DNA of 63,490 nucleotides, the filler included, from Lenisia limosa (lineage: Eukaryota > Protista > Breviatea): assembly GCA_001655205.1 (NCBI GenBank). It is 12 parts of 12 records of this genome, joined end to end, with 100 filler letters (N's around TTAATTAATTAA, not from the genome) between each part and the next. Parts side by side here need not be neighbours in the genome. Positions count along the whole stretch, not along the records: positions 50,290 to 59,911 come from LPNZ01003898.1; 11 more parts are not named here. The stretch is one strand, 5' to 3'. The notes beneath the pieces are model-generated. The model saw only the letters and a list, made by a program, of their open reading frames with translations, was not told where the DNA came from and did not search any database. Below are positions 50,360 to 59,110 of this stretch, piece after piece. Position 1 is the first letter of the stretch. Every line of letters starts with the position of its first letter. Both the position numbers and the translations under genes were made by a program.

Positions 50360-51803
50360 CTCCTGGAGTGTTTCGTGGTTGCACTTTGAGCAAAGGTAGG
50401 ACTGGACAACAACCTGGGGTGTGAGGGAAGAATCATGGGTAACAGCTCTACAATTAATTCGTGAATTAAATGGATTTAGGTGAAAGTATCTGAAGTAGGC
50501 GAATGGAAACAGGAATTGAAAAAAGAAGCCAAAAATGGTACATCCCATTACCTTGGGCTTAACCTCCGAAATTCTAATGACAACACCTCGGACTTGCACC
50601 TAAAAAGTCAGTCTGATCTAAAGTGGAGGATTGTTAGGGTTTTTTTTTGTAAAACAACAAAACAAGTAGGATTTAAAGTGAATGTGTTTCAATCATTCAG
50701 TGGTTAAAAAAAAAAAAAAAAAANNNNNNNNNNNNNNNNNNNNNNNNNNNNNNNNNNNNNNNNNNNNNNNNNNNNNNNNNNNNNNNNNNNNNNNNNNNNN
50801 NNNNNNATTCTGGAATGCTCATCCACTTACAAGGTGTCCGACAGATGAAGAGGCAATTTGACGGAGAGGGAGGGGCTTAAGGTCGTTGCGCTGGAAGACA
50901 AGCTCACTGGCAGTTATTATGGATGATGATCAAAAACGGTTATGAAGAAAGGAGTTATTTTTCATTCCTCCTTTGTGTGAAAATCAACATTACAACCAAA
51001 GGTGCAGTTAAAAAGACAACTTGGGGTATTAATTACGGGTAGCTCATTACGCATATGGTTGACAATATTTCCGACATCATTATTTCTCACAAACTAATGT
51101 TATCCTTTACAACCTTGAAACAAAAGTATGTTTGAAAATATTACAGGAGTCTAGAATTATGATATACAAGGAGAACCCACTATCGACGGTGAAGGATGGC
51201 AGGAAGGGTAGGGGGCTGCTGGGCATTGGCGTTATTGTTCTGCTTCTGAGCATCTGCAACAACGTCCAAACGTGCTTGCTCGAAGTAGTCAAGATCATCA
51301 AGCTCAACTTCTCCCTACATGTTCAGCCAAATGAGCATAGAGACCGCATCCGGAACATGAATATATCAAGAAAGAAGATAGAGTGCTGTTCCCCTACCTC
51401 AGGAAGAGTCTCACCAAGCATCTTATCGATAACTTTGTAGAAAAGTCTGACGTACATTGCGCTGTTGGAGGCAATGTTTTGATAAAGGTCTTCATCATTT
51501 AGCTATAATAGAAGATGAGAAGAGTGTAACAAGCTCAGAGAGAAAACAAGGAAGAACGGTTATTCATGACAAACCTCCAAAATGTCGTCGAGGAGGATTG
51601 TGATGATTTTTTGTTTGCGTTCTTTCACATCCTTCTACAATTTGTCAGAAAAAGCTTCGGAATGAAGTAACTGCCTACCAGGATATCAAGGTATTTGTAT
51701 GATCCTCCTTCCTCAAACTCATTTAAGAAATTCTCGATCTTATCTGCCAAAAGTTAATGATATAATCCAAAAACAAACCGATCTCGCCTGAAAAGTCAGC
51801 CAT
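50360..51803 (-). CDS. MCM7: DNA replication licensing factor MCM7, N-terminal part
   Basis: ATG at 51803; ...PAILHRRYELVF...PLRQIASSSVGHLVQVRGVVIRISEVKPKVVVQSYLCSKCNHETLQE. Confidence 0.88.
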
Positions 51804-52087
51804 TGTGACTCTTTTGAACTACTCGCTTGACTGGACCTTTATATATAAACTAAGGCAAATATGTACAATATATAAATCTAGTTTTTAAAGGCTTAAAGTA
51901 GTGTTGGTTTGGGTTGTTTTTTTAATTGTCCAGTCAAATATTGATTACTTTTGATTAACTAGCTTTTCCACCACATTTATTAAAAGTAACCTTCCTCTTG
52001 CCCCTTCACTGGTTTAAGGCTTGTATATAATAGTTAACTCAAAACGGGGATCTTAGAGTAATCAGTTTTCTTTTGATGGCCAAAACT

Positions 52088-54345
52088 ATGGTCATCCAAT
52101 TTTTCTTATGGTTGATGTTTACGGGGCTCTGTGCCTCTCTGGATTTACAAACTGATAACACGGCGAAATTGAGTAGGGACTTGAGTTGGTGGTTTGGTTT
52201 AATCTTTTAGGGAGCGTTGAAGTCGCTGGAGATGCTGTGATCGCTGGTAATATTTTGACAGCTGATGGGACAGGCAGCTTCAATATTGCACGTAAGCCAA
52301 TTCGCAAAACTAAAAATATATGCAGTTCCCCCCGTTGGCTCCATCAGTGCGTGGGTTCCACCATCCCCTGAAGACGAACCCCCTGCAGGATGGGCCATAT
52401 GTGACGGATCGTTCATTTCAGACAGTGAAAGGTAAATTGCGGGGTTGACTTGCTTATTGGTGTTCAATCTGAAGCTCATCTCACTGATTAGCCCATTTTA
52501 CAAAACCTCTCTTCCGGACCTCCGTGATACCTTCATTATGGGAGCAACCAGCTCTGCTGATGTTGGACAAGAGGCTGGCTCTAAGTGAGTTGGCATGTGG
52601 TTCGCTTTTGCGATGATTTTGCTATTATCTTTGAGTATAAGTAATGTAAACCGGAACAGGGGTTTGGGGTGAGCTTTATTTAGTTTTTATTTGTTTTGGA
52701 TTTCAAGAAGTGACCACAAAAGACGTCAAACTATTATTTATAATCACAATGTTATAAAGGATGAATTATTTTGGGCCTTTTTAACATCCTTAGGCACCAC
52801 ACACATTCGATCACCCAGCCCGACCACACGCATGATGTCACACATAGCCATACTGTCTCCATGGACTTGGGAATGGCTGAGGGTCATAACCATTGGGTGG
52901 CTCGCTTCGGCTCTTATTGGTGTGTGGATTTACTTGATCCAGATTTATTGTGGATTTTATTTAGCTTGCTTTTGTGTTCTTTTGTTGTAATTAAGGGCGC
53001 AATTGATTTTTTTTATTTTATTAAAAATAGTTAAAAATTTTAAGTGAGCGATTGATAAAATTTGTTAAAATTATTTTGTACCAGTAGAGTATTACTTTAG
53101 ACATGGTCCACTAACGCAGAGAAGGCCTCGGGCCCAACACGGGCGACTCTTCTGAAGCCACTCTCAGAGAGACTTGATATGGTTGACAACATTAAGATCA
53201 AACTGTTTCGGGGAAACAATCTCAGCAACAGATTCTGCAATGGCAGGGATCTTTGAATTCTCTTCGGACTCCGCAAAAACATAACAGCAACCCTAGTTAC
53301 AACAGTAAAGACGGAGACAATGGCAAGAGACAACATAGTAAAATGTTGATGAAAGTGGATGCATTTAATTAAAAAAGTACAATAAAAATCAATCGCTCAC
53401 TAAAAATAAAAAAAATAAAAAAAAATTTAATTATTTTCATCTATTTTAATAAAAAATTTAAATCAATCGCGCCCTAATACTGTAATTATTTCACATTGTA
53501 GGTTCTTAGATAATGAACTTGGACAAGAGATTCAGACCACGACTGATGATGGTCGTGATGCTAGTGGATCGGTGGGAGAGGGTATATGACTAGGGCTTCC
53601 CTACGGTCACAAAAAAGACTGTATTTCTCGATAACTCCTCGAAAAATATTGATATTTTACCGGACTTTTTTCGGACCGCAGGGAAGCCCTCTATACTCCT
53701 CCTTGAATATGATATGCAATTTATATTACTTTTACATTGCAACCCCATGCGTTTAGAAGTGACAGCGTACCAATTCCACATTATTTATCATATAGCTATA
53801 TTATATGTATGATGTACATGTTTGCTTGCAGTATTGTGGGAGTTCATAGAAGTCATTTGATTATTTTGAAAGACATTGCACTGCTTTGTTGACCGCTTAG
53901 GGAGCATACCCCTTCAAAGTGAACGCTCCTGTAAACTTATATACTGAGTGGGTTCAGGGGTTTTTTTTTTTATTGCATATTTGGTTTGGAAATATTGCGT
54001 TCTTTCACACATTGTTTTTGTGTTATTTGATCAGGATGATAATTACCTCATTTTTCTTTTTTCTTTCCACAACCGTTTTTGTTTTTTATTCCTCATCTTT
54101 CTTACCAATAGTTTCAACGATGCGCATACCCATATGACGGAAATGGTTTCTACGTTCACTGGCGATTCATCCAACAGCCTCGGTGAACCTATCGAGTCCA
54201 ATGAGGTTTGGCTGCGCTGTAATCGCATCGATACAAGGATGGGGTCCTTATTACTTATTAACATATTCGTTTATTCTGATTCTGTACCTAGGCAAGCTCC
54301 AACCCGCCGAACCTTGCCGTTTACTTCATCATGAGAATCAAGTAA
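52088..54345 (+). CDS. Secreted phage tail-collar/tail-fibre-like protein, 251 aa, 9 exons
   Basis: Exons 52088-52172, 52211-52291, 52326-52431, 52492-52584, 52794-52919, 53502-53571, 53901-53947, 54112-54205 and 54292-54345 join in frame (756 nt). Hydrophobic N-terminus, PPVGSISAW...PAGWAICDG...LPDLRDTFIMG, five HxH motifs, C-terminal NPPNLAVYFIMRIK*. Confidence 0.85.
52993..53476. mobile_element. TIR element with internal GC-richer segment, in intron 5 of the tail-collar gene
   Basis: Imperfect inverted arms (AGGGCGC.ATTGATT...AGTGAGCGATTGAT) enclosing about 53090-53340. Confidence 0.6.
53591..53691. mobile_element. MITE family A copy (variant TIR)
   Basis: TAGGGCTTCCCTACGGTC...GACCGCAGGGAAGCCCTC; both arms vary together. 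Confidence 0.75.
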
Positions 54346-54509
54346 TTCCTCTCACGTGGCATTTTCTTATTTCGTTTTTAGTTCTTAGTTCCATGTAGTT
54401 TTTTTCTATAATCTAAATTGGTTGGTACTCTTAAGGCATGGACGAGCAGAAACGATTCACACACTCAATAATACTAATATATACAAATCTATTAAATCAA
54501 CACTAAACC

Positions 54510-56206
54510 TTAGATCTCGTCATCACTGTCCTCAAGGTCTCCGAAAATATCTTTTTCGGGGTAGTCGCCAACCTTCAGTGCGGCAGGACGGAGGAATGCA
54601 CCTGTAAAAGCATCAGACCTGAAATACGGTATTGCTATACTCACCGTATTTCATTTGGCAGGTGAAATAGCGCTCGCCCTTCACACTAAACGTGTTACAT
54701 GACCACACAAAAACACATTCTTATAAAACAGTAGAATTGAAGAATGCTGCAGAAGCGACTGACTCTCGTGTGTTGTCAGCGAACAGAGTTTATTGCTTTT
54801 TTTGTTGTTTAAATTTACCACCACCCCCAACCTTCCGTCATTCTTTCCTGCAGGCTCATCGAGCTGTACACCAATCCAGTAACCGTTGGAAAATCCAGTG
54901 CGACCTCAGGGAGTGAAATTGGAAAATTTATGAAACAAAAAAAAAATCCCAAATCAAATCTGTTGCTTGAGAACAACAAAAAGCCAAGGCTAGGGGGTCC
55001 AACAATCAAAGGGAAAGGGAAAATATATATGGATCTTGGGGACCTACCAATAAACTTGATAACGCCTCTACGTCCTTCCTTATCCTCACATCTTTGACCA
55101 ACTTGCATGGCTTCGGACTGCGACAATTAACATCACCAAAAATGGCAGAAGAATTTACACTACTTTCCTTCATGAGATAGAGCGGTGTAACAAATTCAGT
55201 CTTTGCCTTGTTGAGAGACTTAACATTGCCCACCTCCTCCTTGCCCTCATCAACGTTGTCAACAATAAGGCCTGCAGCCGCCTTCGCAGCATCGCGTTGT
55301 TGGATAAACTTACGAACCGTTCCTGGATTGTCATTAATTGTTGTTAAAAAGCGTTTTTTTTACTTACATGATCAAGAAAAAAGCAGATACTGCCGGTGGG
55401 GAGTATTTCACAAAAGCTTTTCAAATACCATGCTTTATAATTACCATGACCAACCTTCCATCTTGTCGTAGGTGTCATCTTCTATTTCGTACTTCTTGAC
55501 ACGAGTGGTGTCGGTGTACTCTGCGGTCTTCGCGGGGCAGAGATCGATAATCTATTTTGTGAAATACGAGTGTTTTGCAAAAATGAATTTCTTCAATAAG
55601 GAAGATTATCAGCATAAAATATGAATTCATGGAATAAATAAATAACAACTAAAAAAAGTTGTCTGTCCACAATTTAGATTAGCCTACATGAATTCTGTAT
55701 AAGTTCTGTGTACCGTACTGGCTCAATGTGGTGAGATCACCAAGGGTACGAGACACAACCTCTTCATCTATTGTGTAAAAGATAAGGACTTCTTTGAGCT
55801 TCTTTCCCGTCACTGCAACTGCCAGTTCAACAATCCAATACAGTTATGTTATTGTGATAGTTGTGATGTATTAGTGTAAATCAAAATTATTCAAGAAAAG
55901 AAGACAGTATTGTCATCATACATCGATGATTGTTATTTTCCTTTTATTCATTGCTGTTTTGTATCCACGCCCCTGATACTTTGGTTGTAGAGGATCAACT
56001 TCATATCATCTGGGCGAATAGCAACAATGGGGAAGAGCTTTTCCTTGAATGGTAAGCAGTTATAATATATTTTTTTTGGATAGTGAGGCGTCTCATCTTG
56101 CAAAGGCAGAGCAACTAACCTTGAGATCAATGATTTTCATGTCGTCAGGGAAACGACGCTCCAGGGCAACGCCGGCTCTTGAGTGAGAAATACGGAGATT
56201 AACCAT
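54510..56206 (-). CDS. TBCB: Tubulin-folding cofactor B (UBL plus CAP-Gly)
   Basis: MVNLRISHS...ERRFPDDMKIIDLKEKL...VKKYEIEDDTYDK...[24 protein letters not shown]...GAFLRP...DDEI*. Confidence 0.95.
54742..54985. repeat. Two inverted family D copies flanking TBCB exon 54832-54904
   Basis: + copy 54742-54831 ends at the donor; - copy 54909-54985 ends at the acceptor. Confidence 0.75.
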
Positions 56207-57859: not shown

Positions 57860-59110
57860 ACAAAGAATGCTGAAATCATCATCAAAATCAGAAACTTGCA
57901 GCGATGATCTTTCCTTCAAAAAGCTCACAAGCTCATTATGACAAAAAAAAAGACAGCCAACCAGGACCCGAAAGACATCCGCATCGCCCTTATCCGTATG
58001 GACGGAGGCAAATGACCCATTGTGACAATATGTTAAATAACAAAAATGTGATTCAATGAGAAGTAGAATACTAGAGAGAAAAAAAAGAACAAAAAAAAAA
58101 CAATAACAAGTTTTTTTTTTAAACAATATAAAGTGAACTCTGGCAAAAAAAATTAGTAAACATACATCATCGATCTCCTCCAGGAAGAGCTCAACTAGAT
58201 CCCCAAGTTCCCCTTCGAAGTCGTCATTCGGGTCCAGAATAGCAACTGGTAAAGCGGTGGGCACAACGGTGACTGATCGTGATGGCGAGGCAATGGGCTT
58301 AAAGGCAGGGGGCAGCCCAAGCAACGACGCGACGGAGTTCACAGGAGGGCTGGCGTTCTCCAGTAATGTAGCAATCTAGCTGGAATTAGAAACGGAAAAA
58401 ATTTGAACAAATAAGAACAAAATACTTTGCAAAAACATCAGGATAGAGAGTTCTTACTTTACTGTTGACCTGCGACACTCCATACAGGTGGATTTGGCCA
58501 CCCCAAGCGTACATCCTCTGAGGTCTGGTTAAAAATGTCATCAAGGTTGAAGTCGCATGAGTGAACAGGTATGAGAATAGTTAGCAGCACTATTCATAAG
58601 TTTCAATCCCCCCCCCCCCCAAANNNNNNNNNNNNNNNNNNNNNNNNNNNNNNNNNNNNNNNNNNNNNNNNNNNNNNNNNGTAGAGGAGAAAGGTCCATA
58701 GTGCGGCTGGGAGTACCCGGAGAGAGAGCGAGGGCAAACGCTTTTTTTTAAAGGTTTCTTCGGGAACGTCAGGAGGTGGTTTCACCAGCTTACCTGGCAG
58801 CGACTTGGCCGATTACCGCCGTGAAGGTGGGGAGTCGCTGGGAATCATAAACATCCACTTGACTCAAAATATTCACTGATCACAAAAAGAACCGAGTTAG
58901 TTATGAGGCAAATATTACCAGGGATAACCGATTATTGGACTCAGGAGAACACATATGACAAAATAATGCGAAATAAAATCGAACATCAGCGGAACAAACT
59001 CAAATATCCTTCTCACCACGAAATAGTGAAGGAGGAGTTCTTGGGAAGGGGCCTTGGATCTGGGGATGGAGTCTCTAGGGAGTCCTCGCTGAAGAACAAC
59101 TGTTTCTGGG
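57860..59110 (-). CDS. Hypothetical protein, partial
   Basis: Exons VNILSQVDVYDSQRLPTFTAVIGQVAAR / GCTLGVAKSTCMECRRST / IATLLENASPP...LVELFLEEIDD; both ends uncertain. Confidence 0.45.

What the first reader, a model, noticed from the sequence alone, without database searches (positions are those of the whole stretch)
52088..54345. Secreted, intron-rich eukaryotic homologue of phage tail-collar/tail-fibre proteins
Seen: nine exons join in one frame to give 251 aa. The protein has a hydrophobic N-terminus, a tail-collar-like block (PVGSISAW...PAGWAICDG...LPDLRDTFIMG), five HxH motifs (HTH, HTH, HSH, HNH, HTH) and a C-terminal NPPNLAVYFIMRIK. Established: this layout matches phage tail-collar proteins (T4 gp12-like, PF07484) and bacterial 'microcystin-dependent'-type tail proteins; in T4 gp12/gp37, HxH pairs from three chains bind metal ions in trimeric receptor-binding fibres. 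Inference: a phage-, bacterium- or giant-virus-derived fibre domesticated as a secreted trimeric adhesin or lectin, perhaps for recognising bacterial prey or in an extrusome or coat. It sits between housekeeping genes MCM7 and TBCB on one scaffold, which argues against contamination. This is the strongest candidate for an undescribed system in the window.
Basis: partly seen in the sequence, partly recalled or inferred. Interest (0 to 1): 0.82.

Follow-up and report, generated by a model that had tools for sequence, protein, structure and literature searches.

The report
Eukaryotic secreted phage-tail-fibre-tip-like protein
A real, expressed, nine-exon eukaryotic gene encodes a small secreted protein whose whole mature part is homologous to a bacterial family related to the receptor-binding tip of phage T4's short tail fibre, so it is most likely an old gene transfer from bacteria, with its function still untested.

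Summary
This gives 251 aa, or 255 aa from an in-frame ATG 12 nt upstream.

The protein has a signal-peptide-like N-terminus, a short fibre "neck" motif, a tail-collar block, five HxH motifs and a C-terminal ...YFIMRIK strand.

Its closest relatives are an uncharacterised, widespread bacterial family ending ...LPPYVGLLKIIRIK:
- The best single hit scores 102 bits and aligns end to end.
- An HMM built from 30 bacterial members scores the spliced protein at 120 bits (E 3.5e-29).
- Family members align at full length with "microcystin-dependent protein"/Collar proteins (hhalign 99.85%).
- Family members match the gp12-like PHROG 1800 at 1e-13, and T4 gp12 itself over the collar block.
- The formal Pfam Collar threshold is not reached (12-20 bits against 24).

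Bacterial members lie in ordinary chromosomal contexts. Phage and giant-virus matches are weaker. No close relative of the eukaryotic protein was found in any collection.

Introns, transposon insertions in two introns, host-like GC and tight flanking by MCM and TBCB genes rule out contamination.

I read this as a bacterium-to-eukaryote transfer of a tail-fibre-tip domain. The secreted, trimeric, metal-stapled adhesin role is inferred, not shown. It is a new member of a known kind and of moderate interest.

The parts
52014..54417 (+). Transcribed unit: nine exons, eight GT..AG introns
   Evidence: One 902-nt polyA-RNA contig covers it without any differing letter.
52076..52172 (+). Exon 1 coding part.
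   Evidence: Translation and hydropathy: mean Kyte-Doolittle 1.6 over the first 19 residues. No SignalP run was possible.
52211..52291 (+). Exon 2: neck motif (VEVAGDAVIAGNILTADGTGSF) that precedes the collar
   Evidence: It aligns with the stretch just before the collar in long myxobacterial and Caulobacter family members and with the end of the bacterial N-terminal domain.
52326..52584 (+). Exons 3-4, separated by the 60-nt intron 52432-52491: tail-collar block from PVGSISAW to LPDLRDTFIMG
   Evidence: Pfam Collar scores 20.4 bits, E 5e-4, on exon 3 alone. tblastn hits only phage tail fibres. hhalign against the T4 gp12 collar gives 95.9%. Residues invariant in the family are kept.
52794..52919 (+). 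Exon 5: His-rich block with four HxH motifs (residues 124-155) and the H-x-H-W turn
   Evidence: Three of the four motifs sit in columns where 77-93% of 30 bacterial members have His.
53502..53947 (+). Exons 6 (53502-53571) and 7 (53901-53947): variable loop region with the family's GSG-x-YP motif
   Evidence: Aligned with P0048, P0031 and P0050. The joints are shown by RNA.
54112..54345 (+). Exons 8 (54112-54205) and 9 (54292-54345): the fifth HxH (residues 208-210) and the C-terminal strand NPPNLAVYFIMRIK, followed by TAA
   Evidence: The same end is seen in the bacterial family (...LPPYVGLLKIIRIK) and in T4 gp12 (...RPWNISLNYIIKVKE).
53003..53475 (.). Repeat with inverted ends inside intron 5; likely a transposon remnant
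   Evidence: Inverted repeats I2-I8. DNA word depth is 93-172 against a baseline of about 37. The 79-aa minus-strand ORF has no Pfam hit.
53592..53690 (.). MITE-like element inside intron 6, with 26-nt inverted ends
   Evidence: Inverted repeat I1 is 88% complementary. DNA word depth is 3235 against about 37.

Best explanation
Shown:
- This is a genuine nuclear gene of an intron-rich, compact eukaryotic genome, and it is transcribed and spliced.
- Its product is a signal-peptide-like leader plus about 195 residues. Those residues are homologous, end to end, to the C-terminal module of an uncharacterised bacterial protein family.
- That family belongs to the tail-collar / 'microcystin-dependent protein' / T4 gp12 fibre-tip superfamily.

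Inferred with good support:
- The gene came from a bacterium by horizontal transfer of the tip module, with a remnant of the neck.
- The transfer is old enough for the gene to have gained eight introns, two transposon insertions and host-like base composition.

Inferred from relatives only:
- After secretion, three chains assemble into a short fibre tip. The collar domains pack at the base.
- HxH pairs from the three chains coordinate metal ions along the axis, as in T4 gp12 and gp37.
- The C-terminal strand folds back to close the domain.
- The loops encoded by exons 6-8 form a surface that binds a carbohydrate or envelope ligand.
- The protein would then act as an extracellular adhesin or lectin. 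Its target (bacteria, a host, or the organism's own coat) is unknown.
For: Gene reality:
- A spliced polyA RNA contig covers all nine exons.
- The frame is intact and an in-frame stop lies upstream.

Eukaryotic residence:
- DNA contigs of run X1 run from exons 1-5 into the MCM gene and from exons 7-9 into TBCB, and the RNA bridges the middle.
- CDS GC is 0.49 and GC3 0.50, close to 0.45-0.47 in neighbouring exons. Intron GC is 0.34.
- Repeats lie inside introns 5 and 6.

Homology:
- P0048 scores 101.8 bits over TC 55-250, and P0031 scores 90.5 bits over TC 57-251.
- A bacterial-only HMM gives 120 bits, E 3.5e-29, covering HMM positions 3-183 of 183.
- hhalign against MDP/Collar proteins gives 99.85%, E 6.8e-31, at full length, and 95.9% against the gp12 collar.
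- The family profile hits PDB entries 1PDI and 1OCY, both gp12.
- Family members hit phrog_1800 'tail collar fiber protein' to its last residue at about 1e-13.
- The AF2 model of P0048:62-270 matches tail fibres in its first 18 PDB rows, with Z 5.8 for gp12, 5.7 for an eCIS fibre and 5.2 for the gp37 tip.
- In AFDB it matches 'Tail fiber / Phage tail collar domain' clusters down to E 7.7e-10.

Constraint: every residue that is near-invariant in 30 bacterial members is kept (P58, G60, P75, D82, G83, P92, L101, G120, P239, R249). Four of the five HxH motifs lie in columns that are His in 67-93% of members.

Bacterial rather than viral donor:
- Homologues lie among housekeeping genes in Desulfocarbo and in metagenome contigs.
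- The family is found in Myxococcota, Chloroflexota, KSB1, Planctomycetota, Bacteroidota and others.
- Phage and IMG/VR matches to the protein score at most 65 bits, against 80-102 bits for bacterial ones.
Against: - The spliced protein itself could not be given to Pfam, SignalP, structure prediction or the big protein searches, because it has no reference. Family-level structure evidence therefore comes from a bacterial relative only 31% identical to it.
- That model is mediocre (mean pLDDT 71, pTM 0.43). The PDB matches are weak (no Foldseek E <= 0.001; Z below 6).
- Pfam Collar is below its threshold.
- In the tree the protein sits on a long branch (1.63) with no resolved sister, so the donor lineage is unknown.
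- No orthologue or paralogue was found, so selection could not be measured.
- Trimer formation, metal binding, secretion and ligand are all untested.
- The function of the bacterial family is itself unknown.
Confidence: 0.6

Rival explanations
1. The donor was a virus (a phage, giant virus or virophage carrying a collar-type fibre) rather than a cellular bacterial gene.
For: - The superfamily is best known from phage tail fibres.
- IMG/VR holds 79 loci with relatives, including two giant-virus MAG contigs, L044 and L061.
- Virophage tail proteins with PF07484 are described in PMC12724248.
- The tree does not resolve the protein's sister.
Against: - Viral matches to the spliced protein reach at most 65 bits and mostly cover only the collar. 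Bacterial ones reach 80-102 bits and run end to end.
- Deposited phages give only 30% identity over half the domain.
- The ...IIRIK end and the neck motif are shared with cellular bacterial proteins in non-prophage contexts.
Confidence: 0.15
2. The protein keeps the fibre-tip fold but is not an adhesin for foreign cells. It could be a structural component of the organism's own wall, cyst or coat, a metal-binding protein, or, if the organism is a parasite, a secreted host-interaction factor.
For: - There is no functional data at all for this family.
- A secreted 'Phage Tail Collar Domain' protein is listed among candidate effectors of the parasite Plasmodiophora brassicae (PMC9530463).
- The protein has 11 histidines in 251 residues.
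Against: Every characterised relative of the fold is a receptor-binding fibre tip: gp12, gp37, C24 and eCIS fibres. Cellular bacteria are known to use such trimers as prey adhesins, as in the Bdellovibrio MAT fibres (PMC10769870).
Confidence: 0.25
3. It is bacterial contamination or a chimeric misassembly, not a eukaryotic gene.
For: The nearest relatives are all bacterial. The DNA run X1 may be the very data the window was assembled from, so it is not independent.
Against: - Eight spliceosomal GT..AG introns are removed in a polyA RNA contig from a separate library.
- Identity to any bacterial protein is only 31-35%.
- Base composition is host-like.
- Host repeats lie inside its introns.
- The gene is flanked within 100-260 nt by MCM and TBCB genes.
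Confidence: 0.02
4. It is an expressed but functionless relic of an old transfer.
For: The branch is long, no orthologues were found, and only a single RNA run is available.
Against: - The 251-codon frame is intact across nine exons.
- All family-invariant residues and four conserved HxH positions are kept.
- The N-terminus is signal-peptide-like, though it cannot be derived from the bacterial leaders, because the bacterial N-terminal domain is absent.
Confidence: 0.05

Closest known systems
Uncharacterised bacterial secreted proteins ending ...LPPYVGLLKIIRIK (e.g. P0048, P0031, P0050, P0036 of Desulfocarbo indianensis)
   Same: The order of elements is the same from neck to last residue: the collar block with the short SPF-x-G insert, G-x-GG, a series of HxH motifs, H-x-H-W, GSG-x-YP, a last HxH and the C-terminal strand. 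The HMM scores 120 bits.
   Different: - The bacterial proteins usually carry a 100-900-residue N-terminal domain or shaft that is absent here.
- Identity is only 31-35%.
- The eukaryotic C-terminus reads NLAVYFIMRIK where the family has YVGLLKIIRIK, so the near-invariant Lys is replaced by Phe.
- The eukaryotic gene has eight introns.
Phage T4 gp12 short tail fibre, receptor-binding domain (PDB 1OCY, 1H6W/5LYE, 1PDI)
   Same: - A collar block (IPVGAIMMW...LPDMRGLFVRG).
- An HxH motif. By established knowledge, His445 and His447 of the three chains bind Zn.
- A C-terminal ...LNYIIK strand.
- Supporting scores: hhalign 95.9%, profile E 0.006, VIA Z 5.8 spanning gp12 339-526.
   Different: - gp12 has a single HxH and a long N-terminal shaft, and it is a virion part.
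- Direct pairwise similarity is only 10 bits.
- The region between the collar and the C-terminus is not alignable by sequence.
'Microcystin-dependent protein' (MdpB-type) / Pfam PF07484 Collar proteins of bacteria
   Same: Full-length profile-profile match at 99.85%, E 6.8e-31. These proteins also combine collar, HxH repeats and ...PPYYALAYIMK.
   Different: They form a separate clade (99/98 support). The window protein and its family score below the PF07484 threshold and have a shortened collar insert.
T4 gp37 needle tip (2XGF), Bizionia prophage C24 (6OV6), cyanophage A-1(L) fibre (8KEC) and Photorhabdus eCIS fibre (8ON5)
   Same: These are the best structural matches of the family model. 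By established knowledge, gp37 uses HxH motifs to bind iron ions along the trimer axis.
   Different: Scores are weak (Foldseek E 4e-3 to 3e-2; Z 4-6). The comparison used a monomer model of a bacterial relative, not the window protein.
Bdellovibrio mosaic adhesive trimer (MAT) fibres (PMC10769870)
   Same: They are a precedent for cellular, non-phage use of tail-fibre-like trimers as surface adhesins that bind prey glycans. The N-terminal domain of family member P0008 weakly matches NCBIfam Bdello_MAT_N at 37 bits.
   Different: The match is below the cut-off of 60 bits and lies in a domain the eukaryotic protein lacks. The MAT tips that have been described are other folds.
Secreted 'Phage Tail Collar Domain' protein of Plasmodiophora brassicae (CEO97090.1, listed in PMC9530463); Sulcionema specki transcript P0068
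   Same: Both are eukaryotic proteins with a collar-type domain. The first is predicted to be secreted, and the second is a member of the same ...IIRIK-type clade.
   Different: P0068 groups with a different bacterial member (94/88) and has a Cys-rich N-terminal part, so the two may be independent transfers. Neither has a tested function.

Membership tests
Pfam PF07484 Collar (Phage Tail Collar Domain) | Score at or above the curated gathering threshold (24 bits) against the Pfam model | tested here: not met
   Exon 3 alone scores 20.4 bits, E 5e-4, on profile positions 6-26 of 57. Exon 4 alone gives no hit. The spliced domain could not be submitted because it has no reference. The nearest relatives score 12-19 bits or give no hit.
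Pfam PF07484 Collar (Phage Tail Collar Domain) | Homology to bona fide Collar/MDP proteins by profile-profile comparison | tested here: met
   hhalign of the family plus the window protein against 19 PF07484/MDP proteins gives 99.85%, E 6.8e-31, over columns 2-196 of 197.
T4 gp12-type receptor-binding fibre tip | Collar block followed by HxH and a C-terminal ...N-x-x-L-N-Y-I-I-K-type strand | tested here: met
   The motifs can be read directly. The collar gives 95.9% by hhalign. The family profile hits 1PDI and 1OCY at E 0.006-0.011. Family members match phrog_1800 to its last position.
T4 gp12-type receptor-binding fibre tip | Homotrimer with His side chains of three chains coordinating a metal on the axis | not testable with these tools
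   Only monomer prediction is offered, and only for referenced sequences. The histidines are conserved, but their geometry is unknown.
T4 gp12-type receptor-binding fibre tip | Part of a phage fibre: a long N-terminal shaft, with the gene in a virion module | tested here: not met
   Only about 30 residues lie between the signal peptide and the collar. The gene lies between MCM and TBCB in a eukaryotic genome.
Bacterial ...IIRIK family (unnamed) | End-to-end match to a profile built from bacterial members only | tested here: met
   120.1 bits, E 3.5e-29 at Z 5.8e9, covering HMM positions 3-183 of 183 and protein residues 57-251. In the tree it lies inside the clade separated from MDP at 99/98.
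Bacterial ...IIRIK family (unnamed) | N-terminal domain or shaft ahead of the tip | tested here: not met
   Absent. Only the neck motif remains.
Bdellovibrio MAT fibres (NCBIfam NF053851 Bdello_MAT_N) | MAT N-terminal domain | tested here: not met
   Only the bacterial relative P0008 matches, at 37 bits against a cut-off of 60. The window protein has no such region.

The most novel reading that the evidence does not exclude
A eukaryote has taken only the receptor-binding tip of a bacterial surface fibre, given it a signal peptide, and now secretes a free, metal-stapled trimeric lectin. It uses this lectin to recognise bacterial envelopes, for prey capture or defence, or a host surface. The same molecular device would then be re-used by phages, predatory bacteria and a eukaryote.
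Probability: 0.3. Interest if true: 0.65.

Novelty: new member of a known kind. Interest (0 to 1): 0.45.

Why it matters
Tail-fibre tips are among the best-understood devices for recognising bacterial surfaces. A eukaryotic gene that keeps the whole tip module and is expressed would show this device moving out of phages and bacteria into eukaryotic extracellular biology. This one has acquired eight introns and a signal-peptide-like leader.

The analysis also points to a large, unnamed bacterial family that sits just below the Pfam Collar threshold. That family occurs outside prophages in many phyla, including predatory myxobacteria and an amoeba endosymbiont's plasmid, and it is worth characterising in its own right.

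The finding is not unprecedented. Collar-domain proteins are already annotated in at least one other eukaryote, and nothing here shows a function.

Tried and rejected
**Searches with the spliced protein**
- The spliced 251-aa protein has no reference, so I did not type it into any tool. It exists only in a script file. As a result, Pfam, SignalP-like tools, structure prediction, the Atlas, exact look-ups and the large protein searches could not be run on the full protein. Exon pieces and bacterial relatives were used instead.
- Exons 3 and 4 could not be read through, because the intron begins with a stop.

**Searches that found nothing or too little**
- With the 56-aa ORF it found no close relative in IMG/VR or in JGI metagenomes.
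- phmmer of exon 3 against 1.84e9 representatives gave 11 hits. Four were low-complexity false hits (P0001, P0005, P0007, P0010). The rest seeded the family.
- Alignments with all exon pieces added (A1, A2, A5) misplaced the His-rich pieces and were not used as queries. A3, with exons 3, 4 and 9, was used.
- The window's own protein is not in the 5.8e9-protein collection.

**Leads checked and set aside**
- P0060 (251 aa, NCBI) looked like the window's protein by length, but it only matches the bacterial N-terminal domain.
- P0004 shares the PPNLA-x-YF ending, but it lies in a gene-dense prokaryotic or viral-type scaffold.

**Steps that failed or were unavailable**
- A4 was too diverse for the genome scan, so A6 was used.
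- The Atlas search on a TBCB exon gave nothing useful for identifying the organism.
- The organism is coded and was not identified.
Full report
**1. The observation**

I read 51900-54600 and translated all three forward frames. Eight of the nine exons could be joined by eye with canonical GT..AG sites. The remaining junctions (the end of exon 6 and exon 7) were settled by RNA.

A polyA RNA run of the same coded organism (X2) contains one 902-nt contig that lies on the window in nine blocks, with no differing letter and eight GT..AG joints. The exons are:
- 52014/52088-52172
- 52211-52291
- 52326-52431
- 52492-52584
- 52794-52919
- 53502-53571
- 53901-53947
- 54112-54205
- 54292-54345, with the UTR running to 54417

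All the quoted motifs and the five HxH motifs are present. The transcript also has an earlier in-frame ATG at 52076, preceded by an in-frame stop. The ORF is therefore complete at its 5' end and the product may be 255 aa, beginning MAKT. Either start gives a typical leader: a short polar head, about 14 hydrophobic residues, then ...CAS. That reading comes from sequence and hydropathy only, because no signal-peptide predictor was available.

**2. It is a resident eukaryotic gene**

- The introns are 34-582 nt long, with GC 0.34. The CDS has GC 0.49 and GC3 0.50. Neighbouring exons have GC 0.45-0.47.
- Intron 5 holds a roughly 470-nt element with inverted ends. Intron 6 holds a MITE-like element with 26-nt inverted ends. 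Both are repeated in the genome: word depth is 93-172 and 3235 respectively, against about 37.
- One DNA contig of run X1 runs from intron 5 leftwards about 1.5 kb beyond 51800. That takes it into the minus-strand gene with an MCM OB domain, whose best PDB matches are MCM7 chains (weak).
- Another X1 contig runs from intron 6 rightwards into the minus-strand gene with CAP-Gly and Ubiquitin_2 domains and a ...DEI end, which is the TBCB layout. The RNA contig bridges the repeat-broken middle.
- Spacers are about 260 nt to the MCM start and about 90 nt to the TBCB end.
- X1 may be the assembly's own data, so the independent support is the RNA.
- Contamination is excluded.

**3. What the protein is related to**

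The spliced protein has no reference, so I worked from exon pieces and then compared the spliced protein locally in scripts.

First leads from exon 3:
- Exon 3 alone gives Pfam Collar at 20.4 bits, E 5e-4. That is below the 24-bit threshold and covers half of the model.
- Against deposited phages it weakly hits 88 records; all 15 listed that carry an annotation are tail fibres, some annotated 'collar'.
- phmmer of exon 3 against 1.84e9 representatives returned 11 proteins. One was P0008, which shares the collar, the HxH series and the ...IIRIK end.
- Two further searches, with P0008 and with an alignment that included exons 3, 4 and 9, recovered a large family.

Scores for the spliced protein against this family:
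- P0048 scores 101.8 bits over residues 55-250, P0031 scores 90.5 bits over 57-251, and more than 30 others have E below 1e-3 at database scale.
- An HMM built from 30 bacterial members without the window protein scores it at 120 bits, E 3.5e-29, covering the whole model.

The alignment shows a shared order of elements:
- the neck;
- the collar with a short SPF-x-G insert;
- LPDLR-x-x-F-x-x-G;
- G-x-GG;
- the HxH series;
- H-x-H-W;
- GSG-x-YP;
- a final HxH;
- the C-terminal strand.

All residues that are near-invariant in the bacterial members are kept. Four of the five HxH motifs fall in columns that are His in 67-93% of members. Identity to the best relatives is 31-35%.

**4. Link to tail fibres**

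Sequence evidence:
- The family including the window protein aligns at full length with PF07484/'microcystin-dependent protein' sequences (hhalign 99.85%, E 6.8e-31). It aligns with T4 gp12 residues 330-527 over the collar block (95.9%).
- A family profile finds gp12 entries in the PDB at E 0.006-0.011.
- Family members match PHROG 1800 'tail collar fiber protein' up to its last position at about 1e-13, and several other tail-fibre PHROGs.
- gp12 itself shows the collar motif, one HxH (H-K-H) and a ...LNYIIKVKE end.

Structure evidence:
- An AF2 model of the closest relative (P0048:62-270, 40-row alignment) is confident in the collar and the last strand and poor in between (mean pLDDT 71).
- The first 18 of its 22 Foldseek PDB rows are tail-fibre or baseplate proteins: C24 of a Bizionia prophage, the T4 gp37 tip, cyanophage A-1(L), Pa223, gp12 and an eCIS fibre. 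None reaches E 0.001.
- VIA-align gives Z 5.8 for gp12, 5.7 for the eCIS fibre and 5.2 for gp37. These values are middling.
- In AFDB clusters the matches are significant and are named 'Tail fiber protein' or 'Phage tail collar domain-containing protein', down to E 7.7e-10.

Superfamily membership is therefore well supported, while formal PF07484 membership is not.

**5. Where it came from**

- Bacterial members lie among ordinary chromosomal genes.
- They occur in Myxococcota, Chloroflexota, KSB1, Planctomycetota, Bacteroidota, Desulfobacterota and Caulobacter, and on a plasmid of Candidatus Caedibacter acanthamoebae.
- Many have signal peptides and an N-terminal domain. In P0008 that domain weakly resembles the N-terminal domain of Bdellovibrio MAT fibres, which are surface trimers that bind prey glycans (PMC10769870).
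- Long myxobacterial members align with the window protein from residue about 28-41 onwards, which includes its neck motif.
- Viral relatives exist: 79 IMG/VR loci, two of them from giant-virus MAGs. They match the window protein less well, at 65 bits or below, against 80 bits (tblastn) for bacterial genome loci and 102 bits (phmmer) for the best bacterial protein. Deposited phages match the nearest bacterial relative only over the collar.
- In a maximum-likelihood tree the window protein falls inside the ...IIRIK clade, which is separated from the MDP group at 99/98. It sits on a long branch with no resolved sister.
- A Sulcionema specki (diplonemid) transcript groups elsewhere in the clade, at 94/88 with P0047.
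- A bacterial donor is the best reading, but the lineage is unknown. A viral intermediate is not excluded.
- No close relative of the window protein was found in any collection.

**6. Mechanism**

Shown: the gene is expressed, the frame is intact, and the fold-defining residues and histidines are conserved.

Inferred from characterised relatives, as established knowledge:
- gp12 binds Zn through His445 and His447 of its three chains.
- gp37 binds Fe ions through HxH motifs.
- Both are receptor-binding tips.

On that basis the protein would be a secreted homotrimer held together by axial metal sites, presenting variable loops (exons 6-8) to a surface ligand. What it binds, and why, is open.

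**7. Novelty and score**

This is a new eukaryotic member of a known superfamily, acquired by horizontal transfer. Collar-domain secreted proteins have been listed in Plasmodiophora brassicae (PMC9530463), and a diplonemid transcript belongs to the same clade, so the category is not new. The unnamed bacterial family is a useful by-product. Interest is moderate, at 0.45.

Noticed in passing
It is in a weaker context (T at -3) than the second ATG (A at -3). An in-frame stop lies at 52028-52033.
   Followed up: yes
window 53592-53690: A MITE-like element with 26-nt inverted ends lies in intron 6. DNA word depth is about 3235 against a baseline of about 37, so it is a very abundant repeat family in this genome.
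   Followed up: partly
window 53003-53475: A second repeat with inverted ends lies in intron 5 (depth 93-172). Its 79-aa minus-strand ORF (53097-53336) has no Pfam match. X1 contigs show variants and small indels here.
   Followed up: partly
window 51750-52014 and 54417-54510: Gene packing is very tight: about 260 nt between the divergent starts of the MCM gene and this gene, and about 90 nt between the convergent ends of this gene and TBCB. Introns as short as 34 and 38 nt occur.
   Followed up: partly
L020 3001-3564 (Candidatus Caedibacter acanthamoebae plasmid): A member of the same bacterial family is carried on a plasmid of an amoeba endosymbiont. This is a conceivable kind of route for bacterium-to-eukaryote transfer, but it is only a weak match to the window protein (31 bits by phmmer, 47 by tblastn).
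   Followed up: partly
P0068 (EukProt, Sulcionema specki): A diplonemid transcript combines a Cys-rich N-terminal part with the same tip module ending ...LLKLIRVL. It groups with bacterial P0047, not with the window protein. It may be an independent transfer, or contamination of that transcriptome.
   Followed up: partly
L044 and L061 (giant-virus MAG contigs in IMG/VR): Giant-virus MAGs encode collar-type proteins distantly related to the family (25-33% identity).
   Followed up: no
P0008 residues 27-157: The N-terminal domain of many bacterial family members weakly matches NCBIfam Bdello_MAT_N (37 bits, cut-off 60). This hints that the bacterial proteins are surface fibres akin to Bdellovibrio MAT adhesins.
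   Followed up: partly
L001 6697-9178 (Desulfocarbo indianensis): The family member is preceded, 42 nt upstream, by a 420-aa protein with no Pfam match and followed by a 71-aa ORF. A similar trio appears on a Logan contig (L002). This may be a small conserved operon.
   Followed up: no
window about 50720-50810 and 58640-58700: Runs of N (scaffold gaps) lie inside the piece, one within the MCM gene region.
   Followed up: no
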